DNA of 64,000 bases. Origin: Macrostomum lignano (taxonomy: Eukaryota). Both the position numbers and the translations under genes were made by a program. The stretch lies in NCBI GenBank assembly GCA_002269645.1, contig NIVC01000491.1, positions 372,001 to 436,000 on the forward strand, read 5' to 3'. Shown here one piece after another: positions 3,461 through 61,791 of this stretch; within the stretch, counting starts at the first letter, position 1; each line of letters starts with the position of its first letter. Below the pieces are notes generated by a model that searched no databases, had not been told where the DNA came from, and saw only the letters and a program-made list of their open reading frames with translations.

Positions 3461-4059
3461 AGGTGGCCGTATGAATAAAGTGAGTAGTTGCTCACACTCG
3501 ACGAGATTCTCAAATAAGTATGAATAAAATGAGTGCGTCCTCCTGAGCAAGTGCTCAAAATCAATTTCCAAAGAGTTTGTGCTCTTTCCGTGAGCAAATG
3601 CTCAGTGACTGAGTAGTGACTCGCTTCAGTATGAATAAACTCTGGTCATAGACAAATTGTCTTGAGATCTTGCTCAGCAAAAGTTGAGTCTCCTCTGTAG
3701 TAGACTCACTGGTTGAGCAGCATCCAGCCACTGCTTTGAAAGTGAATTTTCCAGCCACTGCCTGCCACTGGCTACTTGTGTTATTCCAGATGGCCGAATT
3801 CATTCCAGACAGAGTGCCTGCGGAGCGAAAACTATATACTGTATGAAGCGACACAGTATGGACGTGTATCGCGACGATGAGTATAAGCGGCTCTTTCGTT
3901 TCTCTAGTGAAAGTGTTGGATTTCTGGGATCTTGTCGTCGTCAGTTTCTAACGGTCCCATCTCTGTTGAATTCCTGTTGAAATCAAACTGACGCAAAGCT
4001 AAGCTAAGTCAGTTTCTACTTCGAGACAGACGCTAGGACGAAAGATAAGGAGATTTATA

Positions 4060-5817: not shown

Positions 5818-6299
5818 TACTATACGACACACGAGAGACGCCGGGGACCGCTTTCTCTTCGTCTATGGCCAAGAGGTGCCAAGCAGTTACTCAAAATGAG
5901 GAGCAAAGCATCGAGAAATTTCTTTATTCATATGAACATTGAGCAACTGCTCCAGATCAGAGCAGTTGCTCGAGTTCGAGCTCTTGCACAATCTCAGAGT
6001 TTGAGGTTAAACTCGCCAGTTATTGCTCACTTTATTGATATGGCCAAGTGAAATACTTTTAAATGTGGGTTTCGGCTCTCTGTCGGATCTGCGTCCGAAT
6101 GCTCTAAGCTGAGGCAATAAGCGGCAAGTCCTACTCAGTGTTTTCCTGCGGTGTTATACCCTCTCTTCTAATGTTACTCGTATATTTCAATCTAAGCCAC
6201 TGATGACAATTCGCTGTATCATCTATCGTTTTGATCTATTATACGAGCTACCCCCGCAATCCGAAACTTTAGTACCAAGTCGGGTTTTAGACAATGCTC

Positions 6300-8640
6300 C
6301 AAATTGTCAAGGAATCATTTAATGCAAAATCTTCAACACCGACACCGAGTGCCTAGTAGCCCGCTCTGTCGACATGGCAAACCAGTCAAACCATGTGCTG
6401 GTCCGATTACTTAACAGTAGTGACCGACCAACCCAGATTGAGCGAGGACAGGAAATAGCATCGTTCCAGGAACTAGGCCAAGACACGGTAGTAGTACAAA
6501 CAACACTTAACGAACAAGACTTTTCTATTGACAACGTTGACAATTTAAATAGCAAGATAGCTAAACTACCACATCCAGATCGGGGTATTACAGCATGGTT
6601 AACAAAACAATTTCGCTTAGACCAGGCAAAATTCACAACAAAGCAGCTGGGTCAAACTCTCCGGTTATTGAATTATTTTATGGGACAAATCTCACAGAAT
6701 GACACTGATCTGGGGCGAACTCGTCTTCACGAGATGCCTATTGAGCTCATCGACAGGGACACTCGTCCAGTGGCTCTGCCATCAAGACGTACTACACCAG
6801 CTCAGAAAGAATTTCTAGACCAACATGTGGCACAGATGTTAGATCAGGGTATCATCGAGGAGTGTGACTCCGATTGGGCTTCGCCCATCGTGTTGGTGAA
6901 AAAAAGGATGGCTCCCAGCGCCTGTGCGTTGACTATCGCGCAGTGAATAAACTAATCAGACCATGCAGTTTCCCTCTGCCTCTCATCGAGGAATCTTTCG
7001 ATAGCTTGGCGGGGTCAACAGCATTTAGTAGCTTAGACCTCACATCTGCCTATTGGCAAGTAGACAACCGGGAGGCAGATCGCGACTACACGGCATTCAC
7101 ATTGTCCCCAAGGCACCTTCCGCTGGACGGTATTGCCATTCAGCATTAAGACAGCCCCAGCAAACTTTGCGAAACTCATGCATAAAGTCTTTAGACCACT
7201 ACTAATGAAAGTTAGTCTTGTATATTTAGACGACATAATCGTGAAGGCTTGCAGTAACGAGTAGATGATCGTTCACCTTGCTCTGGTTTTGTGGCAATTG
7301 CGAAAGGCTAATCTTAAAGTAAAGCCCACTAAGTGCTAACTTTTTCGGGAGAAAGTAAAGTTCCTAGGATTTATCGTGTCTGCCAGCGGTATCGAGGCTG
7401 ACCCAGAAAAGACACAGGCAGTGCAAGCGTGGTGTACACCAACAGACAAGAGACAACTACTGTCGTTTCTAGGCTTTGCGAATTACTATCGCAAGTTTGT
7501 ACCCCGCTTCTCAATAATCGCTATGCCTCTTTACGCATTGGCCAAGGGCTCAGAAAAATTTATCTGGCTGGAAGGTCACGAGAAGGCTTTCCAGGAACTT
7601 AAACAGAGCCTGTGCTCTCCTCCAACTCTGGTATACCCCCCTTCTTTCACCCACGGGGCGCGAATTCATTCATCCTAGACTGTGACAGCTCACTTGATGG
7701 CGCCGTGCTGTCGCAGATCGGGGTTGATGGTGCCGAGCATGTTATAGCCTACGCATCAAAAAAATTCTCGACAAGCCAGCGCATCTATTGCGCTACGATG
7801 CGTGAACTCTTAGCCTTAGTCCTGATGCTCGAGCACTTCCGCGTTTACTTACTCGACAAGCCGTTTATAGTGAGGGTAGATGCAGCAGCCCTGAAATGGT
7901 TACATTCGAAAAAACAAGCGACAGGAATGCTTGCGCAATGGTTAGCGACGATTGAACTGTATGAATTCGAACTTGATCAGTCAACACTAGAGAGAATTGC
8001 CGAATACGACTTCGAGGTCGAATACACGCCTGGGAAGGAGCATGTTGTGGCCGACGCGTTGAGTCGCAATCCAAAATTTCGGTCGGATCACTTCGACTGC
8101 CCAACTTGTTCCAAGGTTCCGGCGTTCCAACAAAAGTATAGGGCAAATCAAAAGCAGCAGGTAGAGCGCAGTGACATTTCCGAAACAGTCAGCTGCCCTT
8201 GCTTGTCAGGTGCATGTAAGGCCACTCACGGTTGAAGCTAATTGTCAGACAGAAGCTGATGAGGCTGCAGCTGTGCAATATTTGACACAAGCGGTTCAGG
8301 TAGACACATTGGTGACGGAAGAAACACCCCAGAGGGCGGAGCGGCCAGGGTTAGTCCCTCTCGAAACACCTGCAGCCGTGGGCACAGAATCGCCAGGGGT
8401 CGACAAAGACGGTGGGGATGACAACTTCCAGAGGAATCACGAGTAGGCCAGAGAAGCTCAAGAATCGTGCATGGACATAGTCCGACTGATCTCTAGTGTT
8501 GAAGGGAAAGCAATTAAACTAACTAAGGCTGAGTTGCAAGATTGTAGTAGGGAAATCAGAACGTCATGGGATCAGTTTGAGAAACTTTCGGTCGAAATGG
8601 TCTGTTATACCCACCAAGACCGGTTAAATCTAAGGTTAAT
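6300..8640 (+). pseudogene. Degenerate Gypsy/Ty3 pol fragment (RT, RNase H; integrase largely missing)
   Basis: Motifs SDWASPIVLVKK, RLCVDYR, FSSLDLTSAYWQ, VYLDDII (~7220), LLSFLGFANYYRKFV, YCATMRELLA and EHVVADALSR, spread over several frames with stops. Confidence 0.93.
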
Positions 8641-11891: not shown

Positions 11892-12929
11892 AACCTGATT
11901 CAAGCAAAAGAAGCCTTATTCTATCCAGATAGCGATGCCGTAGGTTCTACACAAGATTTATAAAGGCCAAGTCTAAGGCATTTGCCTCTTCATTAGTAAT
12001 CAAACAACTGAAGAGAACTGGACAACTGAATTTGAAAGTTTCAGAGAAAATCCATCGAATGCCTGGCACGCATTTGCGAGGGCCAGATTCGAGGTTCGCA
12101 GCAGCGCATTTCCCTTGTCTATACTTTGCCTTCAATTCCCTTCATGCAGCCTTGGCTTCAATTGTTGTTTACTTTATCTCAGTTTTTTATTACTCTGTCT
12201 CAATTGTTAATTAATTGCAAGAATTCCTTGCTTCAATCGTCTTTTAAATCATTTCATTAATAGTTTCCCTCAATTGTAAATTTCATCTACGCATTCTTTG
12301 CTTCACTTGAAACATTTTTTCATGCATGCCTTCAATCTTCATCATTTTTTTCTGGCCAAATTCGAATATTTTAGCTATTCTTACAGATTTATAGTTTCTT
12401 GTAATGAGTTTATCGCTATGGTATGCTCGTATAATGTACTTCAACAAGTACTTACAAACAAATACTCATGAATAGTAATTACACACAAGTGTGTAGTTAA
12501 TCTAATACATGTAAAATTAAAAAATGAACTCTGTCTGTCTGTGTACAAATTTGTTCGCTACGGGCTCTATACTATAGTGTGCTTTTTCTAGTATTGAGCC
12601 GCTCTCACTCATTCATTTCCCCAAATCAAGAGGATAAGGCCAATGTACATAGCATGTATAGTGCTTTGGAATAACTTCGACTCTATTGGCGCCCCAGTAA
12701 AGAGGCTTGGTTAAAATGTCTCAACCAAACTTTTCTAGCTACCCGACAAGACTGTACTAACATATGGGCCTACCCATCCCCCCAGAACAAGGGGGCACGC
12801 CCGTGTACTTAGCAATGTAAGGTGTAAGAATAACTTCACTTCAAATGGAGATTGGACGTCACCTGATGGACAAGCAACGTATTGGTCTCCTGTCAAAGTT
12901 TTACTTAGAGAAAGAAGTGTAGCTGAAAT

Positions 12930-13385
12930 GAGTATCGAAATTCAGGTCTCCCGGCGTGCCATCTTACTCTGTCAAGAACAAAAAGTAGCAAGGAGAAATA
13001 TCTGCCCCGAAAATGGGGACTTGAACATACCGTGTTCATCGATGCGCTGCTTGATGCCACTAACGGCCAAGTTTCAGCTCAAGACTTGTGCAATAGGGTG
13101 AGATTTAAGTTTGGTTTGCGTTTTTCTATCTGCACAATGAAGAGAATTCGGCGACTGTTGGGTTAGGTTCGAACAACAACGCAGTATTGCCAGATGATCA
13201 AGTTGAAAAATCAACTCATTCGGCTATTATGGAGCGCACTGAAGCTGCAAGAGAACGACAATTTTGAGGATGCCATCTTCACCGACGAATGCAGCGTGGC
13301 TTTATCCCGCAAGACACATCAGACAGTTTTCGTCGGGTCAACTCCTCGCGACCAAAGTTTGCAACTCTGAAGCATTCACTAAAAG
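12930..13385 (+). pseudogene. Degenerate Tc1/IS630-like transposase fragment (second copy ~39953-40408)
   Basis: YCQMIKLKNQ.IRLLW...NFEDAIFTDECSV, with stops upstream. Confidence 0.7.
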
Positions 13386-13589
13386 TAAGCATCCCCTCTG
13401 ATTCGTGAACATATAAACTGCCTATATGCTGCCTATTTCAGATGGCCACGTAGGTGAAGAGAAAGAGAACAGGAGAGATGTTGCTACTAAATGCCATCAA
13501 GGATACTAGTTCCAGCTCTCATGACGAAGAGGAGGGCATTTGTATGAAAACATCATCCTTGCCCAGTGGAGCAGGTTGTTCTTAATGAA

Positions 13590-15800
13590 CATTGGGTAGT
13601 CGACCTGAGGAAGGAGTTAATCATCAGGAGGATAATAATAACAATTTGCCATCTGAATCCGTCTCCGATTCAGAGACTGATGACTATGACGACCATGAAT
13701 CTGATGTAGATCTGAGTGAGGCCTTGAAACACTGGGTAATATACGATAACATCCCACAAGCCTCTGCGACGTCTCCTGGCTGTTCTGCGCAAGAAAGATA
13801 TCCCTTCCTATTTACTTAAGAACACTACTTGACTCTACCCAGGTTGTATCAGGAATCAAACACATTGATCCAGGTAGCTACTATCATTTTGGGCTCCTGA
13901 ATGGGATAAAAAGGCTACTTGATGATGTCGGCTTTCAGAATAATGTAATCTACTAATGTATCCCACTAGTCACAGGCAACATCAACGAAATGTAAAAAAC
14001 CGATAAAAAATAACTAAAAAAAGAAAATAATAATTCCTAAGAACAACCTAATATTGCAAGTAAGGTACCCATTGAGTTTGAGACATCTGCAAATGAATCA
14101 AAATCATTAAGCCCATTGTCAGACAAATCAAGCTCTGAAAATGAGAATCAATGTTCAGGTATTTCTACTAGTAGTTTATTGATTGATGCTTTGCCAGAAA
14201 TGAGGTCTACAACTAGTGAAGTTAATGCAAATGATGATGATGATAATATCAAAGAATTTCTTCGACAATGGGTGATAGAATTCAACATCCCAGTTTATAG
14301 CCTTGATAAACTGCTTCCATGTCTAAAAAAGCAATTTCCTAATTTACCTATGCGTGGTACACTCTCATGAAAACCAACGTTTCATTGCCAATGGTATCTA
14401 TCAACTGTTTCAAATGGTCAAATTGCATACTTTGGTCTAAAAAATATTATTTAGAGAAATTGCCTTTCTACAAATCAGGCTCATTTAGTAATTTTAGTTG
14501 ATGGCCTTTCATTTGCTAAATCATCTACATCTTCATGCTGAGCAATCCTTGGACAACTTGGATCTAGTGAAACACCTTTTGTTATTGCTATTTACCAAGG
14601 AAATGTGAAACCAACAGCATCAGAGTTTATGTCTCCTGTTGAAAATGAAATTAATGAACTCATAAAGGAGCAAACCTAAATTTGAAGTATATTCTAGCTG
14701 AGACACCTACTCGATAATTATTTAAATGTACTAAAGTACATACTGCATACTATTCTTGTGACTGTTGTTTGATCCGAGGCCAAAGAGTAGAAGGCCGAAT
14801 TTTCTTTGATGAGTTTTCCATGCAGCCTTGTAGAAGTGATCAATCTTTCCGAGAAAAGGCTGATGCTCACCATCATGCTGGAAAATCTCCACTGTCACCT
14901 CTTGCTAGATTCAACATGATCATACAGCTACCTTATGACTTTATGCATCTACTTTGCCTTGGCATAATGAAGCGCATGATTGCTTTCTGGAATTGTGGCC
15001 TTCTTGGTGTATCTAGACTTACTGTAAGAGGACGTGCATCAATTTCAGAAAAATTGGAGTTAATACGGCCTTTGATACCATTTGAATTCAATAAAAAAAC
15101 AAGGCCAGTCTCCCAGTACAAACTGTGGAAGGCAACTGAATTCCGGACTTTCCTATTGTATACAGGGATATGTGAATAAAGGATCACTCATTACATTCAC
15201 GCATTTCCCGTAACTTTTGTCTGCTTTTTATTATTGCACGAGTCGTGTTCCAATACGCTCGTAATGTCCAGGGTCAAAAAAGGAAGTACCCGTTCGTTTC
15301 ATTCGAGTGTTTTTACGGAATTGCAAGCGTACTTATTCTCGAATCTTTCTGGCTTACAACCTGCATGTATTGCTTCACCTTCCAGATGACTGTGAATTAT
15401 ATGGTGCTCTGGATTCATTTAGTGCTTTTCTATTTGAAAATACATTGGGTTTCTTAAGGCGCCGTGTTAGGAGTGATAACCAAACATTTATGCAACTTGT
15501 CAACCGAATCAAAGAAGTTTCACAAATTACTACAGTAAATCTGCAAGGCACCAAGCAGAAGGGTATTGAGTTTTTCAAAGAAATTCGTGACAGCCTTCCT
15601 GATAGCATTGCATGCCAAATAACTTCAAGCCATGTTTCTTTGCCAAAGCAGTCTTCAGAAATAAGCAGCTATCCACCAAACATCAAAGGGATGCCTATGA
15701 AGGTTGCAATGGAATGATTGTGAAAATTTCAAAGATTTTTCTCCAGCTGACCATTCGACTCTTTAAGTTGTCGCTCAATGCTTCAAAAGACGGGAAAACA
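13590..15800 (+). pseudogene. Degenerate animal EnSpm/CACTA(CMC)-like transposase, copy 1, 3'-truncated
   Basis: PYDFMHLLCLGIMKRMI, WKATEFRTFLLYTG and LHVLLHLPDDCELYGALDSFSAFLFEN, broken by stops and frameshifts. Confidence 0.75.
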
Positions 15801-15806
15801 ATTTTG

Positions 15807-15926
15807 CGACGTGTAAATTCGGGCATACACTGTGTATCTGCGGGCTGCAATAGACGCATATTGACTCCGACTCGGGATAAGGAGCAGTCGTGTATTAGCG
15901 GGCATCTGTGTATTAGCGGGCAGTTG
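15807..15926 (+). repeat. ~120-bp segment homologous to 23573-23690
   Basis: CGACGTGT(A/G)AATTCGGGCATACACTGTG...TGTATTAGCGGGCAGTTG is shared, with 3 substitutions and an extra 18-bp unit. Confidence 0.9.
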
Positions 15927-15934: not shown

Positions 15935-17763
15935 CCATAGACTACTCAGCATATAGCACTATGCCAGTAGAGTGTTTAGGTATACATTCTCCTCCTTTTC
16001 CCAGTGTGGCTATGGAAAAGTAAGTCCGAGGATGCATTTCTCAGGCCGAGGCGAAGCCGAGGCCTTGAGAATATCATCCGAGGACTTTCTTTTCCATAGA
16101 CATATTTGGAAAAAGGAGGAGAAAATATTTAACCTACTGAAAGCAAAATACGCATCAATATCCAGTACAGTTAGTCTATGGCACAAGCTATGTGACTGAC
16201 TGGCTAAAGTGTTATAAATCGTCTACCTAGATGGAGCACTGAGCAGTCCATCCATTTGCATATATAATAGAACCATGGAAGACGACTTAGATCTAGTGCT
16301 ACGATATTTTGAAAGTAAAGAATCCGCTGCAACGAATCCTGCTGCTGGTAGTGATCGATTCGCTACGCTCTCGACTGACGAAATACAAGGGAAGCTGGAC
16401 GCTGCTATCCCACCAAATACGCGAAGGAAGGAACTATGGGCTGTAAGAATTTTTGACCAGTGGTTTGAGCAGCGACACAATCGAATTCTACATGGTGATA
16501 CAACTGGCCTTCTCGTGTTGAAGGAGCGTCATGAATGGAACGCTTGCGATTGGAACTATCTATTAAAGATGTTCATTCTCGAGGTGCGAAAAGTCGATGG
16601 CACTAAATACAATGCTACGACCCTTAGGGACATATTTTCCATGATGCAACACTATCTGCAGTACACGCTCAAGAAAGAACTGAATCTCTGGAAGGACGCT
16701 GCGTGCAGGGGTGCAAGAATGGCATTGGATGCTGCCATGAAAGAAGCTACTAGAGAGGGCCTAGTTCCGGGGACAAATGCGTCTAGCCCAATTCCCGCAA
16801 CTCTGGAGGAGGAGTTGTGGCAGAAGGGACGTCTTGCAACAACGTCGCCGAAATTACTGCTGTTTACGCTTGTGTTCTACCTTGGCAAGCAGTTCGCTTT
16901 GCGTGGAGGCACGGAGCTGCATGGTCTGAGATATAGCTGTGAGATCCAGTTGCAGCATGAAGACGGTCAAGAACTTCTAGTTTACTGTGAGAACAGAGCC
17001 ACGAAGACCAACAACGCTGGCATAAAGCGACGTTTTGTTCCATTGAAAACCGTTAAAGCATCTCATACTGCTGATCATGATAGATGTCTACCCTGCATCT
17101 ACAAGCTGTATGTGGACAAAAGACCGGAAAACTGTACGGTTCAGAATTTGTTCCTGGCTTGGATGCGTAGCGATGCCAGCATCCAGCAAGGCAGGTGGTA
17201 CCAAAACGCACCCGTCGGCCGGCACAGCTTGGACGGTATTGTTCGTGAATTAACGGCTCCCCTAACTGGAGTGACTGAAAGGTACACTAATCAGTCTCTA
17301 CGCAAGACTTGCGCAAGTACTCTACACCGTGCTGGCTTTGCTAGAGAGGACATCGCTCGTGTTACAGGACACTCTTCGACAGCTATTGAGCGCTATATTC
17401 AGTTTGACGTACAAGACCATGTTAAAGTATCGCATGCTCTTCAATCTGGTGGTCAGTCATCAAGTCTGTCTATTGACACCGAGCCTAAACGCTCTGTTGA
17501 AGCTATGGAACAAAGTAACGTAGTGACTGCTAATCCTGCAAAGAAAATGAGGCTTAACATCAATGGTAACACCAACACCGTTGAAATCGTTTTTGAGTGA
17601 GTGCTTACAAGACGCTTCTAAATCTTACTATTTGAACTTCCTGTTGTTGGTTTACATTTGTTAAATACAAGTGTTTATAGCAGGACTGAGAACTATTTCT
17701 CAGGCCTCGTTTGGGGACTGAGAAATGGTTCTCAGTCCTCCTACAACCGATAAATTACCATAG
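15935..17763 (+). mobile_element. Crypton-type tyrosine recombinase DNA transposon
   Basis: CCATAG direct repeats at 15935 and 17758; an alternative right end is the 10-bp GGGCCATAGA repeat at 15932/17888. Left ~150-bp imperfect hairpin (15981-16130) around GAGGCGAAGCCGAG. Right hairpin 17682-17739 with 22-bp arms matching 21/22. Single YR ORF inside. Confidence 0.75.
16275..17600 (+). CDS. Crypton (DUF3504/ZMYM-KCTD1-related) tyrosine recombinase, 441 aa, intact ORF
   Basis: FILEVRKVDGTKY, QFALRGGTE (R), TKTNNAG (K), YTNQSLRKT (HxxR position, H replaced by Q), VTGHSS (H) and IERY (Y). Confidence 0.92.
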   Translation: MEDDLDLVLRYFESKESAATNPAAGSDRFATLSTDEIQGKLDAAIPPNTRRKELWAVRIFDQWFEQRHNRILHGDTTGLLVLKERHEWNACDWNYLLKMFILEVRKVDGTKYNATTLRDIFSMMQHYLQYTLKKELNLWKDAACRGARMALDAAMKEATREGLVPGTNASSPIPATLEEELWQKGRLATTSPKLLLFTLVFYLGKQFALRGGTELHGLRYSCEIQLQHEDGQELLVYCENRATKTNNAGIKRRFVPLKTVKASHTADHDRCLPCIYKLYVDKRPENCTVQNLFLAWMRSDASIQQGRWYQNAPVGRHSLDGIVRELTAPLTGVTERYTNQSLRKTCASTLHRAGFAREDIARVTGHSSTAIERYIQFDVQDHVKVSHALQSGGQSSSLSIDTEPKRSVEAMEQSNVVTANPAKKMRLNINGNTNTVEIVFE

Positions 17764-18147
17764 AAGTTGTTGTTCCTCGGGAAAAGGATGAGACTGCGAA
17801 AGAGGCGAGAAATGCACTTTCTGTAGGTTAACACTTTTCCTTATAAAAATATACATATTAACAACCTGATGATTGACTGCAGCATTTGGGCCATAGAAAC
17901 TTAATGGGATAGCGCATTTCATATTAGGGACTATATATAAACTTAAGCTTCCCCCTTCTAGTAGAAGCAGAGCAGCAGTCTTTATGGTTAGATCGCAGAA
18001 GAATAGCGCATCGTCTCACACAGTTCCAGCAGCAGCATCGTGAGCATGTTCGACGACGACGACGACGAGATAATGTTAAGTGTGGAAGAGCAGCTCGAGC
18101 TCGAAGAACAAGTTGCTGCTGAAGAGCGGCAGGCGGAGCAACTGCAG

Positions 18148-18350
18148 ATGGAAGCTGCCGCTGCTGTTGCTACTTGTCATGAGGAGGAGTTGGAAGCTGC
18201 CGCTGCTGTTGCTACTTGTCATGAGGAGGAGTTGGAAGCTGCCGCTGCTGTTGCTACTTGTCATGAGGAGGAGTTGGAAGCTGCCGCTGCTGTTGCTACT
18301 TGTCATGAGGAGGAGTTGGAAACTGCCGCTGCTGTTACTGCTTTTCATGA
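18148..18350 (+). repeat. 42-bp coding tandem repeat (EEELEAAAAVATCH), about 4.5 copies
   Basis: Direct inspection; the repeat is in frame in ORF 18040. Confidence 0.95.
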
Positions 18351-19978
18351 GGAGCAGCAACCCAGTCGCCGGCGGAGGCTATTAGAAGATGTCAGCACGC
18401 CGCAGACGAGCAGCGCAACGCCCTCTCGGTGCATCATAGCCAATGAGACGCCGGAACCAAGGCAGCAGCGCGGCTTGCCTAACAAGCTGCCGCGATTAAT
18501 TGTCTACAGCAGCGGTAGCGACGAGGAACAGCAGCAGCATCCTGCTGACCACGTCGCCGGCTGCGGCGACCAGCCGCCGACTCTGCAGTTTATTCCGAAG
18601 GCGTCGCCCTCATTCCATACTACTGCCTCTGCTGCCGCTGCTGCTCAAGCGTCACCGAAGCCACACCTTCTACGGCAGCCTAGGATCGGCCCGTGCGGCA
18701 TCGGCGCGCCCTGGCGCTTCACCACTCGCCCTGCTGCTCCTACTGCTGCCTTCCGGTTCATGACGCCACCAGCCTCACCGAGACCTCGGTCAAGCCGCCC
18801 GCCGACGACGTTCTACCCGAGAGGTGGGTTACGTGCATTTCGCGCTCACACCTTTGCTCATGTTACATTCTCTCATATTACAGTAGTATCATTTTCACAT
18901 TTTTGTTTCCCGACGACACAGGAGCCACCGCCGCCGCCGTACCGCAGTCGAGTGCTACGCAGCGCGAGCGGGCTTTGGCCTCTGGCTACGAGCTGGCGGC
19001 CAGGGCGATGGAGGCGACAGCTGAATATAACCTCGCAGAGACGACCTGCCCGGCCGGCGAAATCCCACTGTTCCACGAAGAGGGGGAGGAACGGCAGCAG
19101 CAGCCGGCTAGCACCTCGCCGAAGGGAACGAGCTCGCGCCTTCTGGCATCGTCCGTGCCGCTGCATCCCAGCGACACCGTACCAAACGACATAATGGTTT
19201 CGGCTAATGCGAGCCGGCGTTCGCATCGTGCAATGTCGGTGATTCAGCTGTACTACGTCAAGAACGCACCCCAGATGAAGCTGGTGATCAACGGGACCTG
19301 GAGCGGCGACTTCACGACACAGTTAGCCATAGGTGAGTGAGTGAGTGTTTGCGTCGTTTCACAAGTGTCTGGAAAACTCATAACAATTATCTTCTACGTA
19401 GAACATGCGATTTGAAGAAACTCTTTAACCCATCCCCCAACGCCACCACAACAACCAACAACTACTACTACTGTATGTAATAAGGCCTGGCAGATAACGA
19501 ATTTATGCTGACTCCCGCGCACATGACTGACGCGTACGCCCCGACTCCATCTTGCCCTGTGGACAAGACACGATCGCTGTTGATATTTTTGCGATCCAAT
19601 GCCATGCACAATTCCTTAGAATTAATTGATCGCCTGCGAAATTTCTTCGCGTCTGGCTCCAGCCTGCACACCTTTGCGGTGCAGGGATGGACATGCGCCG
19701 AGATCAGGAGCGTGCGCTCAGCAGCTGCCGAATTACGACGGGTGACCATGCACGACCCACAGCCGCTATCACCGAAATCGACGACGCTTGTCTGTCCCGC
19801 GTTGTCCAACTGTACAGATGGGCTATGTCATATCCGCTGGGGAGTATGGCACCGCGACCAGACGACCCCCATCTCGTCTGCGGTAATCCACTGCTTTTGA
19901 AGCAGACCATGGATTTCTTTACAACGGTGCAACAGATGCGCAGAATTCGTGCCGAAGAGCACGTGTCACTGCTCCCCA

Positions 19979-20575
19979 ACAACAACAACAAAATACGCTG
20001 TCATGATGGTAAAAGTCAGCGTCACAGGGCGCGCTTCATGGCTTGGGCGCGAACAAAGACCGCGCCACCGGCAGTGTCCGGGGCGCCGGCGTCAGCCAGC
20101 AGACAGTCGACATAACGCCGAGTTCGCGCTTGACCTCGCCGGTAGGGTGCCTGCAGCGTGAGCAGCAGCACCTCCTGCACCGGCTGTGGGCAGTACGACT
20201 CGGCGCGGATGAGATGGCCTGCGAGCTGGAGTCGCCGACGGCGCAGTAGATCACTTGGACGTGGCAGGCCAGCGCGGCGATAGAGTGCCGCGTTGGTGAC
20301 TCGCTCGACGCCGATGTTGAAGGCGGCGCGCAGCAGACCAGCGTGCGCCGCATCGACTTGCTGTTCGAGTGAGTCCGTCAGCGTCCAGGTCTCGGCGTTG
20401 TACAGCAGGACGGTCTCGATTACCGCCTGGAACAGCGCCGCCCTCTGGCGGTCCGGTAGGGCCTCGGACTGCAGGACTGCCCTCACAGAACGAAAGGCAG
20501 CCCAGGCAAGCCCGCGGCGGCGTCGCAGGTCCTCGCGAGCGTCTGGAACCAGACCGCCGAGGTAGACGCTCCCCA
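19979..20575 (-). mobile_element. 5'-truncated RTE-clade non-LTR retrotransposon
   Basis: C-terminal RT/thumb peptide (YLG...AFR...LFQAVIETVLLYNAETWTL...RRRLQLAGHLIR), a 3' (TGT)n tail at ~19979-19992 and an 8-bp TSD GCTCCCCA at 19971-19978 and 20568-20575. Confidence 0.88.
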
Positions 20576-21549
20576 GCACCATTGTCCGGCCGAGTATGTG
20601 CGGGGCATGTCACCGCCTGCCTGTACAATGCATGCAGGTGCCTCCACGCGGCGACACAGCCGCTTCAAATACGGATCAGCCGGGGTGCAGCAATGTGGCA
20701 ACACACCGCATCGCGCTAGGTGGAAGCTGCGCGATTCAGCAGGCAATCTGCACAGCGATGCGGCAGACTGTAGTTGTGCCCTCAATCCTGTACCTATGGG
20801 GTGCCAGTGGAGTGGGCAAATCAGCAATGGTGGGCCTGTATTTTGGTCGTGAGACCGTATTCACTCCGAACCTTGACGAGAGTTTTGCCTTCGACGGTCT
20901 GCGCCTGGGCATTCATAGGTGTCTGTTCTTTGATGAGCTAAGCGTCTCGCAGGCCTCCTCGCAGCAGCTGCTTCTGCTGCTCAATCGCGATAAATTTACC
21001 ATCAACGCCAAGCACAAGGCCCACATTCTGACTGAATGGAGCGGCCCGGTGATGCTCGCTGGCCATTTCCCTCCCGCCGACCTGCCCATAGACTTTGTCA
21101 GGCGGGTCAACTCCGGCGGCCAGTGTATTCACGTGAAGCACGACATATTCCGGTGCACCGGCTGCCAGCTGCAGGATGATGCTCGCGCAGAGTCTGATTA
21201 GAGCTTGATTAGCTGGATTGACGAACAACAGGGCAGATAAACGATGACGCACTGCTTTCCCTACCCTTGAATATTCCCAAATCCCGATTCCCCTCCTAGC
21301 AATCAAGCCGGCCTTATATGCATTAGTAGTGGATTTTGTTGTTGTTGCTAGGCTGCTCACATAGTGCAGGATGCGCCGTAGAACGCAGGTAAAAACAAAA
21401 CTAGGTAATATTACTCGTCGGTCAGCAACGCAGCAAAGTTCACGTTTGGCCGTTCAAGTTCCAACAATTTCGTGTTACAGCTATTATACGAGCCACTGCA
21501 GGGACAATAAAAATTCAACTATTCTGCAGCTTTATGTGCACCTTTTGCT

Positions 21550-22481: not shown

Positions 22482-24801
22482 ATGTTCAGCTTTCTGCGCC
22501 TCCTCTTTGGCGACGACGCCGCAGCTGATCCAGCAGCAGCAGCAGGAGCAGCAGCAGCAGCAGCATCAGCAGCAGCAGCAACATCCACCAGCGAGCACGA
22601 GTCTGAAGCAGCTGCTCCACCAATCGCCGCCGCCGCTGAACAGGTATATTCGGCTAGTTTCTGTTGGCCACCAATTCCAGCTGCTGGCGTGCCTTGTAGC
22701 CAGCGTAACAGCCCGCTGATTTCGCCGCCGAACCGGTCGGCGGTAATAATGATTCCAACAACAGGTGAGCACGCCTTTGCCTGGAAATAATTGTGCGTGC
22801 GTGCGTGTGCGGGACAATTTTATATTCGTGCGCTCTTTCCACGTATCAGAAACTATATATATTGTTTCCTCGTCTAATAAACTCAACAATAGGCAAAACA
22901 GCAGTGCCTGCTGCTACGGATGCTGCCTCCTCGGCTACAGCTGCTGCAGGTGCATCCGCCGCCAGCGCCGATGCCAGCAACAGCAGCAGCAGCAGCAGCA
23001 AGAAGCGGTATGCAGCCTGGGAGAGCTGTCCCCCAACGTTGGGTTGGCGGTGGATGGCGGTTTTTACAGCGTAAGTCGGTCTGCGGAGGAGCCCTGCGCA
23101 CCGGGACTCGGGTCCCCACGCTCTCTGGCCACCCGCCGCAGGCCGCAAATTGGATTCCGCCGTCTACTGCCCGCCAGCGCAGGGTCAGCGCCCCGGCTGC
23201 ATGGGGCTACGCCCCCGGTCCTATTAGCTACGTCTAGCTACAATGTCCGTGACCCGAAAAAGAAAGAAAGAAAGAAAGCAAGAAGCGAGTGTGTCCTGCA
23301 GATGGATGTTCCGTTATCATGCGAATGGATGCACTTAAACGCCACTTTACGGCGAAGCATGTTGCCTGGTGCCTGGCTCGCCCCGTGAGCGCCAATGTAA
23401 AGGACACGGCTGCCGGCTGGTCTACAAAGCAGCGCGTGGACTGGCACTGGCGCGGCCTGATCCTTAGAAGTGAGCAGACCATCAGCTCGAAGAAGCATGA
23501 AAGAACCGAAACGTATTGCGAGCAATGCGCGTGCTGGTTTAGGGATAGCGACAAGCACCAGGTGAGCAGTTGCGACGTGTGAATTCGGGCATACACTGTG
23601 TATCTGCGGGCTGCCATAGACGCATATTGACTCGGACTCGGGATAAGGAGCAGTCGTGTATTAGCGGGCAGTTGTGTATTAGCAGCCAAAGCAACACCAG
23701 CGTCTGCCGACCCGCCGCCAAACGAGGCGTCCGCTATCTCCGCCGCCACTGGCATCGACGCTGCCACCGCTGCTGCCGAAAAGAAAAAGAAACGCGGCTC
23801 CCTGTCCGCGCGATTCAGACCCGATTCGCCAGCCGTGCTGCAGCTAAGAGTGCTGAGATCGCTATACTACGACCTTTCGACAGGTGTTCGCGATCCAAAC
23901 ATCGACGGCTTTGAGAAGTTGAAAGCAATCGCCGACCTGGTACTATCAAGCTTTGAGAAGATGGCGAAAGTACCATATTCGGCCTCCACAGCCGTGGACG
24001 GTGAAAATTACGACTGCAGCGATGACCAAGATGCCGCAGCAACTCTTCCGCAACCGCCGCCGCCGCCGCCGCCACCGCCGCCGCCGAAGCTGAGGCTTCT
24101 GCATGCTCGGAGTCGTCGACTACTCAGCCGCAGCCTCCAAGAGACTTTCTATTCTGTCTGGCCGACCCAAATTCCGCCGCAGACGCTCTACGCCAGACTA
24201 GTAGCAGCAGGAGCGCCCGTCACAAGTAGGAGGCGGCCCTCAGGGGCGCCCAGGAGGCGCGGACGCACCGCAGCCCTGTGGCGATCCAGAGGCCCGTCCT
24301 CTGGCCCGTCGCCGAGGACGACGAGCAGGCCGCTTCCGTGGCCCAGCTGGGCGGGAGCTGTTTTTAAGCCTGCGCCAGGCTGCTGCCCGGGTAGCCACCG
24401 CCACGCCGCTTTATGCGCGGAATACGAGGCCTCCTGGCCTCCGTCCGCCGCCTGGATTGCGAGCTCCGCCGTCGACGCCGGTCAGCCGCGGCACGACCAC
24501 CGATGGTCTCATGGCGTGGACAAGGCAGAGACAGGCCCAGGCCATAGCTGACCTGATTGTGCTGGCTGGCATCCGGCTGCACTTGTTCGCCGGGCTGCCG
24601 CCAGACCTACAGGCCCAGCTCAGGCAAGAGAGCCTGCAGTCCCGGCAAACACTTTTTGAATGGGCGGCGAACTTGGCAGCCAGGACGCTGGCCGACCAAG
24701 AGTTCAGCCGCCAACATACCGAACTGGTAGCGCGGCGATTCGCCGCGGAGCTCGGCCATGTGGACCTGCCACCGCCACTCAAGGCCGTCCTGCGAGAGTG
24801 A
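22482..24801 (+). pseudogene. Multi-exon gene of unknown function with a C2H2/BED-like zinc finger, disrupted
   Basis: ATG 22482 and a phase-compatible intron 22765-22901. CPADGC-x11-HFTAKH and CEQC motifs at 23289-23560. Further frames run to the stop at 24801, with AATAAA at ~24812. Frameshifts are needed, so the exon model is uncertain. Confidence 0.45.
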
Positions 24802-28433: not shown

Positions 28434-28929
28434 AGCATTGCCATTTTAGTAATTCTCCCCAAGAGTCATTATAACATTACAGCATTATAGCAATTCCTCC
28501 AAGCCTTGACATCGTAGCGATTCCCAAATGAATCTCCTAACTTCGACATGACTCTTCTTTTATATCTACTTTCATCTGTTTAAAATGACGCTTCTTCTAT
28601 TAGCGCCCCTCGTGGGGAACTAACAAAGAATGTAATAAAAAAGTGAATAAACTACATGTAGCTTCTGAATTTTACCTAGACATCTCAAAAATCCCTCATA
28701 AGCATTTACGAGTACATCTCAGTTATTCCCCGTGAGCCTTAACATCTTAGTAATTCTCCTCAAGAGTCACAGCACAGTTTCACGTGACTCTTTTTTTATT
28801 TTGAAATGACGCTACTTTTTGACATGACGCTTCTTTTTACATGATGCTTATTGATTTTTACGTAATGCTTCTATTTTTTTACATTTTTTTACTTTTTTCA
28901 TTTTTACATAAAGCTCATTTTCTTTTCTA

Positions 28930-29600
28930 CATGACGCCTCTGTTATTTTTACCGGACGCTTTTATGATTGTTTACATGACGCTTCTATGATTGTTTACAT
29001 GACGCTTATATGATTGTTTACATGACGCTTCTATGATTTTTTACATGACGCTTCTATGATTGTTTACATGACGCTTCTATGATTTTTACATGACGCTTCT
29101 ATGATTTTTACATGACGCTTCTATGATTTTTTACATGACGCTTGTATGATTTTTTACATGATGCTTCTATGACTTTTACATGACGCTTCTATGATTTTTT
29201 ACATGACGCTTCTATGATTTTTACATGACGCTTCTATGATTTTTACATGACGCTTCTATGATTGTTTACATGACGCTTCTATGATTGTTTACATGACGCT
29301 TCTATGATTTTTTACATGACGCTTCTATGATTGTTTACATGACGCTTCTATGATTTTTACATGACGCTTCTATGATTTTTTACATGACGCTTCTATGATT
29401 TTTTTACATGACGCCTATATGATTGTTTACAGGACGCTTCTATGATTTATTACATTATGCTTGTATGATTTTTTACCGGACGCTTCTATGCTTTTTTACA
29501 TGACGCTTCCATGATTGTTGACATGACGCTTCTATGATCGTTTACATGACGCTTCTATGATTGTTTGCATGACGCTTCTTTCATTTATACATGACGCTTC
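28930..29600. repeat. ~22-24-bp minisatellite (TACATGACGCTTCTATGATT(G/T)TT)
   Basis: Roughly 28 copies with variable T-run length. Confidence 0.95.
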
Positions 29601-29929
29601 TTTTTTTGCTTTTATTAGCTGTGTTTTGATATTAGAATACACATACAGGCGCAGTCCCAAGGCTTTTTGCCGAATTTTGCGGACACGTTTGTGGACAAGT
29701 CTGGCTTGAGTTTATGGTTTGACAGCCACTTTGACTTGTCATTTTCTTCTACCAAAAACCGATTAAAGGCTTTCAAACCTTTCGATAAAAGGTGCCATAA
29801 ATATTTATGCGAAGACTACATCTATATTTACTTGTATAGCTAAAGAAACTAGAACGTCAGAAGCTTCCCCTCACCATTCCCCTCTGAGGGATATAAACAA
29901 GTGCATCTTATCAGGGATAAGTAATTAGA

Positions 29930-31480
29930 AATCGTGGATTCGGATTCCAACATGAGGAACCAGGGATATAAATTTAGAAATCGTGGATTCGGATTCCGAA
30001 ATGAGGAATCAGGGATATGGAATTAAGAATCGTGGATTCAGATTCCAACATGAGGAATCAGGGATATGGATTTAGGAATTGTGGATTCGGATTCCAACAT
30101 GAGGAATCAGGGATATGGATTTAGGAATTGTGGATTCGGGTTCCAAAACGAGGAATAAGGGATAGGGATTCGGAATCGGGGATTGAGATAAAAAAATGAG
30201 CTTCTCACCGTTCTATGATAGCTGGCAGTCTTTCAAACATTTAGAAAAAGGTGCCATAAGCTCCTCTCTGCCTTATGAATTATGATATCTGACCCAGTCT
30301 TTCAAGTTTCTTGCAAAAGGTGACATATGCTTTTCTGGGAAAGGGAACTAAAAATCGTGGATTCGGATTCCAAAATGAGGAATCGGAATATGGAATTAGA
30401 AATTGTGGATTCGGGTTCCAAAATGAGGAATCAGGGATATGGAATTAAGAATCGTGGATTCGGATTCCAAAATGAGGAATCGGGGATATGGAATTAGAAA
30501 TTGTGGATTCGGGTTCCAACATGGGGAATCAGGGATATGGAATTAAGAATCGTGGATTCGGATTCCAAAATGAGGAATCGGGGATAGGGATTCGGAATCG
30601 GGGATTGAGATTAAAAAATGAGCTTCTCACGGTTCTATGATAGCTGGCAGTCTTTCAAACATTTAGAAAAAGGTGCCATAAGCTCCTCTCTGCCTTATGA
30701 ATTATGATAGACGATCCAGTCTTTCAAGTTTCTTGCAAAAGGTGCCATATGCCCTTCTGGAAAGGGAATTAAGAATCGTGGATTCGGATTCCAACATGAG
30801 GAATCAGGGATATTGAATTAGGAATCGTGGATTCGGATTCCAACATGAGGAATCAGGGATATGGATTTAGGAATTGTGGATTCGGATTCCAACATGAGGA
30901 ATCAGGGATAGGGATTTAGGAATTGTGGATTCGGATTCCAAAATGAGGAATCAGGGATATGGAATTAGGAATCGTGGATTCGGATTCCAACATGAGGAAT
31001 CAGGGATATGGAATTAGGAATCGTGGATTCAGATTCCAACATGAGGAATCAGGGATATGGAATTAGAAATTGTGGATTCGGGTTCCAAAATGAGGAATCA
31101 GGGATATGGAATTAGAAATTGTGGATTCGGATTCCAACATGAGGAATCAGGGATATGGATTTAGGAATCGTGGATTCGGGTTCCAAAACGAGGAATAAGG
31201 GATAGGGATTCGGAATCGGGGATTGAAATTAAAAAATGAGCTTCTCACGGTTCTATGATAGCTGACAGTCTTTCAAACATTTAGAAAAAGGTGCCATAAC
31301 AAGCTCCTCTCTGCCTTATGAATTATGATAGATGATCCAGTCTTTCAAACGTTTAGAAAAAGGTGCCATAAGCTCCTCTCTGCCTTATGAATTATGATAT
31401 CTGACCCAGTCTTTCAAGTTTCTCGCAAAAGGTGCCATATGCCCTTCTGGGAAAGGGAATTAAGAATCGTGGATTGAGAT
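29930..31480. repeat. 49-bp satellite with a recurring ~185-bp spacer (higher-order repeat)
   Basis: Unit AATCGTGGATTCGGATTCCAACATGAGGAATCAGGGATATGGAATTAGG. The spacer containing ATGAGCTTCTCAC...AAAAGGTGCCATA recurs at ~30165, ~30585 and ~31200. Confidence 0.95.
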
Positions 31481-32188
31481 TAAAAATGAGCTTTTCTAGG
31501 TTCTATGATTTCTGGCAGTCTTTCAAACATTTAGACATTCAAACATTAAACATCAAATATTGTTTCATACATTATATATACTACACCTTGTGGGATTACA
31601 CGCAGGTGCGGTTTTAGTTGGGGGGGGGGGTTAAAGGCCTATTCAAAGGCTTAATAAACTTCATTAGGAAGATTTCCGTCTGCGAAAACTCTGATTCCCG
31701 CCCTCATGCGCCCTATCTCCCCCCTCCCCCCCTACTCCTGTAGGTTAGGGTGATGAAAGATCAGAAGAGTGATATACTGTAAAGGAGAGGATCGCGAGAT
31801 AGGACAATAGGTAGAGATACAGACTACCTATAGGGTAGGACGAGAGTAGCATGACTGAATGGCCTGGAGGAAGGTGATAAAAAGCGATAAAAGCGATATG
31901 GGCGATTCTGTGTGGCAACATAACTCATCACTAACAGTGCATCGAGTGGGTTAAAGATTAGGACAAAGGCATTACACAATTAAGTAGTAAAAGTAAATCA
32001 TAACTCAATTATAATAACTTCGTAAATCTCAGCAACATCGAAAAGTCGCCATCACAGAAGTCTGTGGTCGTCACTTTTGAAAGTGCAGGTGAAGTCTCTC
32101 AATCTTTGCGAGTGACGCAACGCCACGCGGCAGACGTGAGTTGAGGAATGAAGTGGGGAGCGGTGTGCGAGGGTTGAACGGATTAAAG

Positions 32189-32386: not shown

Positions 32387-32694
32387 GATTAAAGCTACCT
32401 TGATTAGTTTATATCATATCTTTTATTTATAATATTTTAACTCACTCACTAATAATATATTACTCTCTGGCGCATAGAGTGGCGACTTTTCAATGTTGCT
32501 GAGTAACGATATTTAGTAGATCCTGAACTCTCAGCAAACAGTGATCTAGATGGAGTATACCTAATTGAAAAATAATCAATAACAAAACAATCAACAATAA
32601 CAAGTCCGAAAATGACACTTTTGATTTTTATAGTGCCAAATAGATATAAATCTGCGCTGATCCCTGAAGCCATGCCTTAAAGCCCAAAAACGCT

Positions 32695-61726: not shown

Positions 61727-61791
61727 CTGCAAGGGTTCGAAAATGTCAAATAAATGATTTATTCGTTTACATGTATACTATTTTAGTCGGG

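What the first reader, a model, noticed from the sequence alone, without database searches (positions are those of the whole stretch)
18046..21201. Hidden intron-containing Rep-like (SF3 helicase) gene that reassembles into one ~766-aa frame
Seen: four separate ORF-track fragments join into one frame. Intron 18824-18921 (GAG|GTGGGT...ACACAG) and intron 19333-19493 (G|GTGAGT...TGGCAG) are both phase 1 and link frames 1, 3 and 2. Deleting the RTE plus one TSD copy joins ...HVSLLP to STIVRPSMCGACH... exactly in frame. Only one 1-nt indel near 19769 is needed (HDPQPL/ITEIDDACLSRVVQLYRWA). The C-terminus has Walker A GASGVGKS, Walker B LFFDE, a B'-like KFTINAKHK and RRV. Established: this is the SF3 helicase architecture of ssDNA-virus Rep/NS1 proteins, which are not normal animal genes. 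Inference: an endogenised virus-derived or virus-like mobile gene with spliceosomal introns and a long low-complexity N-terminus, possibly domesticated or part of an undescribed element.
Basis: partly seen in the sequence, partly recalled or inferred. Interest (0 to 1): 0.9.

Follow-up and report, generated by a model that had tools for sequence, protein, structure and literature searches.

The report
Broken virus-derived Rep gene in flatworm
This stretch of Macrostomum lignano (flatworm) DNA holds a disrupted copy of an old host gene family that descends from the replication protein of small circular DNA viruses, has lost the DNA-cutting residues and kept the ATP-binding motor part; it is a fossil of a known kind with some unusual features.

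Summary
At 18046-21201 (+), pieces in three frames form one collinear gene through two GT-AG, phase-1 introns. The gene is broken once by a frame change and once by a nested retroelement-like insertion.

The C-terminal part is an SF3 NTPase. It matches a profile of Rep relatives at E=1.5e-24. Profile hits in PDB are parvovirus NS1, AAV Rep40/68, E1 and CRESS Rep, and Foldseek gives the same list.

Its distant relatives are HUH+SF3 Reps on circular ~2.7-kb contigs. Its close relatives are a second, transcript-supported M. lignano paralog and four eukaryote-like contigs.

In all five close-family members where these positions could be read, the catalytic tyrosine is missing and the HUH histidines are missing or incomplete. 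The three nearest also lack the motif C asparagine. Walker A, Walker B, B' and the arginine finger persist. Non-synonymous divergence (0.35-0.45) lies far below saturated synonymous divergence.

Intron sites differ between the paralogs. The upstream Crypton is an unrelated insertion.

Verdict: this is a pseudogenised member of an anciently endogenised, nuclease-dead, Rep-derived gene family. It is a new variant of a known kind and of moderate interest.

The parts
18046..21201 (+). Rep-derived gene. It is a broken copy with 1 frame change, 1 nested retroelement-like insertion and 0 premature stops inside the pieces. It comprises a low-complexity N-terminus, a nuclease-like remnant, a linker and an SF3 NTPase domain.
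   Evidence: Searches give the frames and the splice model. One search shows collinear mapping of three pieces on L007. One search gives the best relative at 1.1e-20. One search gives E=1.5e-24 against the Rep profile.
18104..18355 (+). A 42-nt tandem repeat (five overlapping 84-nt copies at 42-nt spacing, i.e. about six units; 14-aa unit) inside exon 1, within the acidic, low-complexity N-terminal extension.
   Evidence: (family D1; the later copies are 93-99% identical to the reference, the first 67%) and the translation.
18824..18921 (+). Predicted intron 1: 98 nt, GT-AG, phase 1, 42% GC. It lies in the low-complexity region and is not verified by any homolog.
   Evidence: The spliced N-terminal extension is about as long as the continuous one in paralog L002.
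19333..19493 (+). Predicted intron 2: 161 nt, GTGAGT...CAG, phase 1, 43% GC. It lies inside the nuclease-like remnant.
   Evidence: After splicing, the spacing between alignable anchors is 33 residues, against 35 in the continuous relative L007. This is my own count on the sequences, using the alignments. L002 and L007 are continuous at this site.
19240..19755 (+). Approximate bounds of the nuclease-like (HUH-derived) domain remnant, at the end of exon 2 and in exon 3. The positions of the HUH histidines and of the catalytic Tyr and Lys carry other residues.
   Evidence: E=2e-3 to L007; L007 and P0038 against the Rep profile, 5.5e-15 and 3.2e-14; columns. The structure model is of low confidence and the fold match is unspecific.
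20728..21138 (+). SF3 NTPase domain. Walker A, Walker B, the B' lysine and the arginine finger are present. The motif C asparagine is replaced by histidine.
   Evidence: columns; E=1.5e-24; PDB profile hits to NS1, Rep40/68, E1 and CRESS Rep; pLDDT >90 over residues 50-190; Foldseek.

Best explanation
The window is Macrostomum lignano DNA, and 18046-21201 (+) is a pseudogenised member of a small, old gene family.

**Origin of the family (inferred).** The family arose when the Rep gene of a circular Rep-encoding ssDNA (CRESS-type) virus entered a flatworm-lineage germline. After capture the gene lost the HUH and tyrosine nicking site and gained a long acidic, low-complexity N-terminal extension. 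It gained Cys/His positions around the NTPase domain and, in different lineages, different spliceosomal introns. It then evolved under purifying selection as a host gene that binds nucleotide but cannot start rolling-circle replication. Full helicase activity is doubtful, because the motif C asparagine is lost in the M. lignano clade.

**This copy.** The window copy later suffered one frame change and one retroelement-like insertion, and it is most likely non-functional.

**Shown.** Homology, domain identity, motif states, gene structure, the breaks, and the chromosomal, TE-rich context.

**Inferred.** A single ancient endogenisation, past selection acting on a host gene, and present inactivity of this copy.
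For: **Host identity**
- The neighbouring ORF is 99-100% identical to M. lignano proteins.

**SF3 identity**
- A profile of 10 Rep relatives hits the C-terminal piece at E=1.5e-24.
- The PDB profile search is led by parvovirus NS1 (1e-7), AAV Rep40/68 (1e-6), E1 (6e-5) and CRESS Rep (1e-4), each matching over the whole domain.
- The AF2 model has pLDDT 80. Foldseek gives E1, Rep40/68, PCV2 Rep ATPase and B19 NS1 in PDB, and NS1 and 'ATP-dependent helicase Rep' in BFVD.

**Viral relatives**
- P0039, P0045 and P0047 lie on 2.67-2.73-kb contigs with 26-30-nt terminal overlaps, so the contigs are circular. They are 38-42% GC.
- Their Reps carry a Gemini_AL1 nuclease domain plus SF3. One comes from a bat-saliva metagenome.

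**Host-gene phase**
- The paralog P0023 (L002) sits next to COG7 and EME1 host genes. It comes from a transcript-based annotation that excluded transcripts overlapping repeat annotations.
- L007, L008, L003 and L009 are relatives on eukaryote-like contigs, and L009 has GTAAGT...TTTCAG introns.
- P0038 and L007 align to the Rep profile from the nuclease motifs to motif C at 3e-14 and 5.5e-15.
- The motif III tyrosine and lysine are present in 9/9 circular relatives and 0/5 close-family members. The HUH histidine pair is present in 9/9 against none complete.
- For the NTPase halves, pN is 0.35-0.45 against pS of 0.81-0.84.
- The gene is 54-63% GC, like the paralog, against 38-42% in the circular genomes.
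- No other ORF of the circular relatives is present nearby.

**This copy is broken**
- It has one frame change and one insertion. L002, L007 and P0038 are continuous at the insertion point.
- No protein of this locus is in the protein collection.
Against: - Synonymous sites are saturated, so no dN/dS value could be given. Part of the constraint could date from a viral phase before capture.
- The taxa behind L003 and L007-L009 are unknown.
- The nuclease-like domain of the window copy itself is only weakly supported: E=2e-3 to L007, hhalign to the Rep profile not significant, structure pLDDT 58, and only generic ferredoxin-like fold matches.
- The frame change could be an assembly indel in a PacBio/Pilon assembly.
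- No expression data for the window copy were available.
- The class of the nested insert is unconfirmed.
Confidence: 0.8

Rival explanations
1. The locus is a functional, merely hidden gene. On this view the frame change is an assembly error, and the nested insert is removed from the transcript or tolerated.
For: - There are no premature stops inside any piece.
- The assembly is PacBio-based and polished with Pilon.
- The paralog L002 is transcribed.
- The NTPase motifs of this copy are as well kept as in L002 and L007.
Against: - An insertion of about 0.6 kb that interrupts a segment continuous in L002, L007 and P0038 is not an assembly artefact.
- No gene model or protein from this locus exists in the collection, although the flanking Crypton ORF is annotated.
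Confidence: 0.07
2. The M. lignano copies and their relatives are separate, fairly recent integrations of exogenous viruses, with no long history as a host gene.
For: - Rep EVEs are commonly independent integrations (PMC3198968).
- The paralogs share no flanks and no intron sites.
Against: - All five close-family members whose nuclease-like region could be read lack the catalytic tyrosine, and none has a complete HUH pair. That is incompatible with a replicating rolling-circle virus.
- They share derived traits that are absent from the circular relatives: the C-terminal His/Cys motif, the CxxC before Walker A and, in M. lignano, the N-terminal extension.
- Their GC content is host-like. Introns are present in several members.
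- No capsid or other viral ORF is nearby.
Confidence: 0.06
3. The gene is cargo or machinery of a mobile element. Candidates are a Crypton-Rep composite or a unit of about 7.8 kb bounded by the 114-nt direct repeats.
For: - A Crypton tyrosine-recombinase ORF lies 450 bp upstream on the same strand.
- 114-nt direct repeats at 15804-15917 and 23570-23683 bracket both genes.
- ssDNA-virus-like transposons have been described.
Against: - Another Crypton copy (L001, 99% identical) shares only about 15980-17829 and diverges before the Rep-derived gene.
- L002 has neither a Crypton nor shared flanks.
- There is no second copy in the window.
- The nuclease residues needed for Rep-driven mobility are absent.
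Confidence: 0.05
4. It is a cellular P-loop/AAA+ gene with no viral ancestry, and the Rep likeness is convergent or reflects deep common descent.
For: - Pfam alone gives only weak generic P-loop hits for the window piece (AAA_16 at 0.002, RNA_helicase at 0.26).
- Some sigma-54 activator AAA+ structures appear lower in the Foldseek list.
Against: - Relatives align collinearly to HUH+SF3 Reps of circular genomes from the nuclease motifs through motif C.
- The top sequence and structure hits are all viral SF3 proteins.
Confidence: 0.02

Closest known systems
Endogenous Rep sequences of circular ssDNA (CRESS) viruses in eukaryotic genomes (Liu et al. 2011, PMC3198968; Katzourakis & Gifford 2010, PMC2987831)
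   Same: It is a chromosomal, Rep-only, virus-derived sequence in an animal genome. This copy is disrupted. Some members of such sets are conserved and expressed.
   Different: - It forms a multi-member family with shared derived traits: a dead nuclease site, Cys/His positions and an N-terminal low-complexity extension.
- It has lineage-specific spliceosomal introns. The Liu et al. text does not mention introns.
- No paper that my searches returned describes a Rep-derived gene in Macrostomum or in any flatworm genome.
Captured Rep genes with an inactivated nuclease: avipoxvirus apvRep genes and HHV-6 U94 (Kinsella et al. 2023, PMC10193959)
   Same: - HUH is inactivated and the catalytic tyrosine is missing, while Walker A and B are conserved and the other helicase motifs only partly so.
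- There is evidence of purifying selection and transcription.
- Helicase-only forms exist. apvRep-5 is one, and the annotated L002 product here is another.
   Different: - The recipient here is an animal nuclear genome, not a large DNA virus.
- The gene has introns and a long disordered N-terminus.
- dN/dS could not be quantified here because dS is saturated.
Rep of the unclassified circular ~2.7-kb genomes L004-L006 (P0039, P0045, P0047 and kin)
   Same: These are the nearest sequences with an intact HUH+SF3 architecture. They share the linker and the NTPase motifs (21-25% identity to the window's C-terminal piece in alignment A1; profile E=1.5e-24).
   Different: - They are circular, 38-42% GC, and carry three ORFs on the same strand.
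- They keep HUH, the Tyr/Lys of motif III and the motif C Ser-Asn in 9/9 sequences, and they have an acidic Ser-rich tail.
- They have no introns and no N-terminal extension.
- They were not found in IMG/VR.
SF3 helicases with solved structures: parvovirus NS1, AAV Rep40/68, papillomavirus E1, PCV2 Rep ATPase
   Same: The fold and the order of motifs A, B and B' and the arginine finger match.
   Different: - Sequence identity is only 10-18%.
- The motif C asparagine is replaced.
- Pfam Parvo_NS1 and PPV_E1_C are not hit by the window piece.
Helitron RepHel
   Same: It is a eukaryotic genomic gene with a Rep-type ancestry.
   Different: Helitrons couple a two-tyrosine HUH domain to a Pif1-like SF1 helicase (from my own knowledge). 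Here the motor is SF3, and no Pif1 or SF1 hit appeared in Pfam, PDB or Foldseek.

Membership tests
SF3 helicase / NTPase | Walker A (GxxxxGK[ST]) | tested here: met
   GASGVGKS aligns with the invariant G, S, G and K columns of the relatives.
SF3 helicase / NTPase | Walker B acidic residues after a hydrophobic strand | tested here: met
   FFDE aligns with the invariant glutamate column.
SF3 helicase / NTPase | Motif B' (conserved lysine in the DNA-contacting hairpin) | tested here: met
   The lysine of INAKHK aligns with the invariant K column of the circular relatives.
SF3 helicase / NTPase | Motif C (Ser/Thr-Asn, sensor 1) | tested here: not met
   The window, L002 and L007 have Gly-His where 9/9 circular relatives have Ser-Asn. 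By eye on alignment A1, most other close-family members also lack the Asn, with P0025 the possible exception.
SF3 helicase / NTPase | Arginine finger after motif C | tested here: met
   The Arg aligns with the invariant R column.
SF3 helicase / NTPase | SF3 fold | tested here: met
   The AF2 model has pLDDT 80 and pTM 0.74. The top Foldseek hits are E1, Rep40/68, PCV2 Rep and NS1, at E between 1e-7 and 1e-5 and TM about 0.5.
CRESS-DNA virus Rep (HUH endonuclease + SF3) | Sequence homology to Reps of circular ssDNA-type genomes | tested here: met
   Profile E=1.5e-24 for the NTPase part. The close relatives P0038 and L007 align from the nuclease motifs to motif C at 3e-14 and 5.5e-15.
CRESS-DNA virus Rep (HUH endonuclease + SF3) | Motif II (HUH metal-binding histidines) | tested here: not met
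   The window copy has no histidine at either column. The pair is complete in 9/9 circular relatives and in 0 of 5 close-family members, and P0038 keeps one.
CRESS-DNA virus Rep (HUH endonuclease + SF3) | Motif III (catalytic Tyr, YxxK) | tested here: not met
   Tyr and Lys are present in 9/9 circular relatives and 0/5 close-family members. The window has Arg at the Tyr column.
CRESS-DNA virus Rep (HUH endonuclease + SF3) | Motif I and the HUH nuclease fold | tested here: inconclusive
   Two alignments place motif I on different strands. The model has pLDDT 58, a beta-alpha-beta-beta-alpha-beta-alpha order and only generic ferredoxin-like matches. A circovirus Rep domain ranks 37th at E=0.31.
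CRESS-DNA virus Rep (HUH endonuclease + SF3) | Located on a small circular genome with a capsid gene and a stem-loop origin | tested here: not met
   The gene is chromosomal and lies among transposons. No homolog of the other ORFs of the circular relatives is present. A stem-loop origin was not searched for.
Non-retroviral endogenous viral element | A virus-derived sequence embedded in host chromosomal DNA | tested here: met
   It lies in a 64-kb M. lignano window with Crypton, Tc1-like and LTR-type elements. The paralog lies beside COG7 and EME1.
Exapted (domesticated) viral gene | An intact ORF, expression, and purifying selection among orthologs | tested here: inconclusive
   The window copy is broken. 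For the family, L007 has a 465-codon open segment, L002 is transcript-supported, and pN is far below pS, but dS is saturated and orthology is unknown.
Crypton (tyrosine-recombinase transposon) | The gene lies inside the repeated Crypton unit | tested here: not met
   Copy L001 matches the window only over about 15980-17829.
Helitron RepHel | A Pif1-like SF1 helicase fused to HUH | tested here: not met
   There are no SF1 or Pif1 hits, and all of the best hits are SF3.
Parvovirus NS1 | A Parvo_NS1-type nuclease and helicase | tested here: not met
   PDB NS1 chains match only the generic SF3 core (1e-7). There is no Pfam Parvo_NS1 hit. The full-length relatives carry a Gemini_AL1-type nuclease on circular genomes.

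The most novel reading that the evidence does not exclude
The close family may be a truly domesticated, nuclease-dead Rep-derived NTPase of macrostomid flatworms and perhaps other invertebrates. On this reading it is kept for a host function, such as binding DNA or poisoning the Rep hexamers of related circular viruses. The single frame change found in the same short linker stretch of both M. lignano paralogs would then not be decay. It would be a selected or recoded way of expressing the nuclease-like half and the NTPase half separately.
Probability: 0.25. Interest if true: 0.65.

Novelty: new variant of a known kind. Interest (0 to 1): 0.42.

Why it matters
Rep fossils of circular ssDNA viruses are common, so finding one is not surprising in itself. 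This one adds a flatworm host lineage to the record and points to a rare, unclassified group of circular genomes as the nearest living relatives. It also shows the pattern seen in Rep genes captured by avipoxviruses and HHV-6, this time inside an animal genome: the nicking site is destroyed, the nucleotide-binding core is kept, and constraint is long-lasting. Here the gene has also gained introns and a disordered N-terminus. If the family proves to be expressed and conserved across Macrostomum, it would be a clean case for asking what a Rep motor without its nuclease is kept for.

Tried and rejected
**Searches that found nothing or too little**
- The word-indexed protein search with the C-terminal piece found nothing. 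With alignment A1 it found only five circular-genome Reps.
- A single-sequence PDB search found nothing.
- Pfam on the raw pieces gave only weak P-loop hits.
- A scan of metagenome contigs and a scan of IMG/VR contigs found no relatives.
- The window has no second copy of the gene.

**Tests that were inconclusive**
- hhalign of the window's nuclease-like piece against the Rep profile was not significant. The link had to be made through L007 and P0038.
- The structure of the nuclease-like piece was of low confidence and its fold matches were unspecific.
- dN/dS could not be computed because dS is saturated.
- The retroelement class of the nested insert was not confirmed.

**Ideas rejected**
- Crypton and the Rep-derived gene as one element.
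- Synteny between the paralogs.
- My first impression that window intron 2 and the L002 intron share a site. Both are phase 1 with a G|GTGAG donor, but mapping on L007 puts them at different places.
- Canonical -1 frameshift signals. I saw no slippery heptamer by eye in either paralog.
- Helitron, parvovirus NS1 and RNA-virus 2C origins.
Full report
**Source and setting.** The window is Macrostomum lignano DNA.
- The ORF at 16275-17600 is 99-100% identical to a cluster of M. lignano proteins (BOX15_Mlig005367 and others).
- The window is rich in transposons. It holds a Crypton-type tyrosine recombinase, a Tc1-like DDE_3 transposase between 128-nt inverted repeats, an RT_RNaseH fragment, a 3.3-kb segment present twice at 99.2%, and several long tandem arrays.

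**The observation.**
- Exon 1 (18046-18823) is 778 nt and exon 2 (18922-19332) is 411 nt, so both junctions are phase 1.
- Both intervals start with GT and end with AG. Both are 42-43% GC, against 54-63% in the flanking coding sequence.
- Joining the three exons as they stand gives 531 open codons.
- Further on, the reading moves into another frame once. A retroelement-like insert with a short flanking direct repeat interrupts the gene once. There are no premature stops inside the pieces.
- I did not close the gene across these two breaks. I compared the pieces apart instead.

**Collinearity.** The best bridge is L007, a metagenomic contig with a 465-codon open segment that spans both domains. 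A phmmer search of L007 against all stop-to-stop segments of the window finds three pieces in the right order.

| Window piece | L007 residues | E-value |
|---|---|---|
| Exon-3 piece | 142-227 | 2e-3 |
| Middle piece | 220-284 | 3e-5 |
| C-terminal piece | 307-459 | 1e-30 |

L002, L007 and P0038 are continuous where the window copy carries the insert.

**What the C-terminal part is.** Pfam alone is nearly blind to it (RNA_helicase E=0.26). The word-indexed search and the single-sequence PDB search also found nothing.
- A full HMMER scan of 1.84 billion representatives gave 22 hits at E<=1e-3, the best at 1.1e-20.
- A profile of ten relatives hits the window piece at 1.5e-24.
- A PDB search with the family profile is led, over the whole domain, by parvovirus NS1 (1e-7), AAV Rep40/68 (about 1e-6), papillomavirus E1 (6e-5) and CRESS replication-associated proteins (about 1e-4). 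Dynein, ABC and GTPase chains match only the P-loop.
- The AlphaFold model has pLDDT 80 and pTM 0.74. Its best PDB matches are E1, Rep40/68, PCV2 Rep ATPase and B19 NS1. Its best BFVD matches are NS1 and 'ATP-dependent helicase Rep'.

**Two circles of relatives.**
- *Distant circle.* P0032, 33, 35, 36, 39, 41 and 45-47 are proteins of 368-491 residues with a Gemini_AL1-type HUH domain and an SF3 domain. P0039, P0045 and P0047 lie on contigs of 2712, 2726 and 2670 nt with 26-30-nt terminal overlaps, so the contigs are circular. They are 38-42% GC and carry three ORFs on one strand. One of the runs is a bat-saliva metagenome.
- *Close circle.* This contains a second M. lignano gene, P0023 (BOX15_Mlig013629g1 on NIVC01001938, locus L002, 37-42% identical). 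It also contains L007 (41% to the window, 52% to P0023), L008/P0025, L003/P0038 and L009/P0027.
- L002 lies near COG7 and EME1/MUS81 genes.
- The GenBank models of this assembly come from a transcriptome set that excluded transcripts overlapping repeat annotations (PMC5730564). The L002 gene is therefore transcript-supported. Its annotated product is the NTPase half alone.

**The nuclease half.** P0038 and L007 align to the profile of the circular-genome Reps from the nuclease motifs through motif C (hhalign 3.2e-14 and 5.5e-15, probability 98%).

| Position | 9 circular relatives | 5 close-family members with this region |
|---|---|---|
| HUH histidine pair | 9/9 | none complete (P0038 keeps one) |
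| Motif III tyrosine | 9/9 | 0/5 |
| Motif III lysine | 9/9 | 0/5 |

The window copy has no histidine at the HUH columns and an arginine at the tyrosine column.

For the window copy itself the evidence for this domain is modest. The match to L007 is E=2e-3, and direct profile comparison is not significant. The model has pLDDT 58 and the expected strand-helix order, but only generic ferredoxin-like matches.

**The NTPase motifs.** Walker A, Walker B, the B' lysine and the arginine finger are kept.
- The Ser-Asn of motif C is invariant in the circular relatives. It is Gly-His in the window, L002 and L007, and by eye on alignment A1 it is absent from most other close members.
- Nucleotide binding is plausible. 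Normal SF3 hydrolysis is doubtful.

**Signs of a long life as a host gene.**
- The close family shares derived traits that the circular relatives lack: a CxxC before Walker A and a His/Cys motif at the C-terminus. In both M. lignano paralogs there is also an acidic, low-complexity N-terminal extension of about 340-380 residues.
- Introns are present but are not shared.
  - L002 has one 78-nt GTGAGT...CAG intron. Its junction is confirmed by the continuous sequence of L007, and the window copy is continuous there.
  - The window's intron 2 lies at a site where L002 and L007 are continuous. After splicing, the spacing is collinear: 33 residues against 35, by my own count on the sequences.
  - L009 has AT-rich GTAAGT...TTTCAG introns inside the NTPase domain.
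- For the NTPase halves of the window, L002 and L007, synonymous differences are saturated (pS 0.81-0.84) while pN is 0.35-0.45. This shows long constraint, though no dN/dS value can be given.
- A rolling-circle virus cannot replicate without its nicking tyrosine. This constraint, acting on a clade that lacks the tyrosine throughout, is best explained by evolution as a cellular gene after a single capture.

**What it is not.**
- The Crypton upstream is a separate insertion. Copy L001 (99% identical) shares only about 15980-17829.
- The paralogs share no flanks.
- The window has no second copy of the gene.
- No other ORF of the circular relatives is nearby.

**How it compares with what is known.**
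- Rep-derived sequences of circular ssDNA viruses are widespread in eukaryotic genomes, and some are conserved and expressed (PMC3198968; PMC2987831).
- The closest functional parallel is the set of Rep genes captured by avipoxviruses, together with HHV-6 U94. In these, HUH is inactivated and the tyrosine is mostly missing, while Walker A and B are kept. They are under purifying selection, and helicase-only forms exist (PMC10193959).
- The new features here are the recipient (an animal nuclear genome in flatworms), the introns, the N-terminal extension and the rare donor lineage.

**Open point.** Each M. lignano paralog has exactly one frame change. The two changes go in the same direction and map to the same stretch of about 10 residues in the linker of L007.
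- L007, L008 and P0038 are in frame there.
- L007 is closer to L002 than either is to the window copy, so the two changes look independent. For a gene of about 765 codons, that would happen by chance about 1% of the time.
- I saw no slippery heptamer.
- The possible explanations are assembly indels, a mutational hot spot, selection for uncoupling the two halves, or recoding. Raw reads and RNA-seq would decide between them.

**Verdict.** The copy in the window is a broken member of an old, nuclease-dead, Rep-derived gene family. It is a new variant of a known kind and of moderate interest.

Noticed in passing
window 15980-17829 (ORF 16275-17600, +): An intact Crypton-type tyrosine-recombinase unit of 441 aa (DUF3504 at 4.6e-21, plus QRICH1 and a weak Phage_integrase hit). 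M. lignano has at least 8 near-identical full-length annotated copies. Copy L001 shares only this unit and also carries a second, 31%-identical recombinase on the other strand.
   Followed up: partly
window 15804-15917 and 23570-23683: A 114-nt direct repeat (95.6% identical) brackets the Crypton, the Rep-derived gene and 2.4 kb more. The left copy abuts the end of a 3.3-kb segment that occurs twice (12482-15806 = 39505-42830, 99.2%). Its meaning is unknown.
   Followed up: partly
window gene 18046-21201 and L002 (NIVC01001938): Both M. lignano paralogs have exactly one frame change, in the same direction, within the same stretch of about 10 residues of the inter-domain linker. Three other relatives are in frame there. 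The annotated L002 product is the NTPase half alone.
   Followed up: partly
window 4058-5819: A Tc1/mariner-type element: an intact 365-aa DDE_3 transposase ORF (4335-5432, 4.7e-17) between 128-nt inverted repeats that are 98% identical.
   Followed up: no
window 7612-8235: An RT_RNaseH fragment of an LTR-type retroelement (8.6e-25).
   Followed up: no
window 28777-29601, 29907-31535, 32674-36703, 57530-58330: Long tandem-repeat arrays. The largest is about 4 kb, with strong AT skew.
   Followed up: no
window 59671-61749 (-): A 692-codon open frame in a 63% GC stretch. It encodes a Gln/Ser/Pro-rich low-complexity protein with no Pfam hit.
   Followed up: no
window 23289-23582 (+): A short ORF with what looks by eye like a C2H2 zinc-finger pattern. 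It ends where the right copy of the 114-nt repeat begins. It has no Pfam hit.
   Followed up: no
close family: window 20596-21198, P0023-P0029, P0042: Conserved Cys/His positions (CxxC before Walker A, and His-x4-Cys-x2/3-Cys at the C-terminus) are absent from the circular-genome Reps. They may form a zinc site; this was not tested.
   Followed up: no
L004, L005, L006: Circular contigs of about 2.7 kb with Rep plus two ORFs on the same strand that have no Pfam family. This lineage was not found in IMG/VR by the pattern scan.
   Followed up: partly
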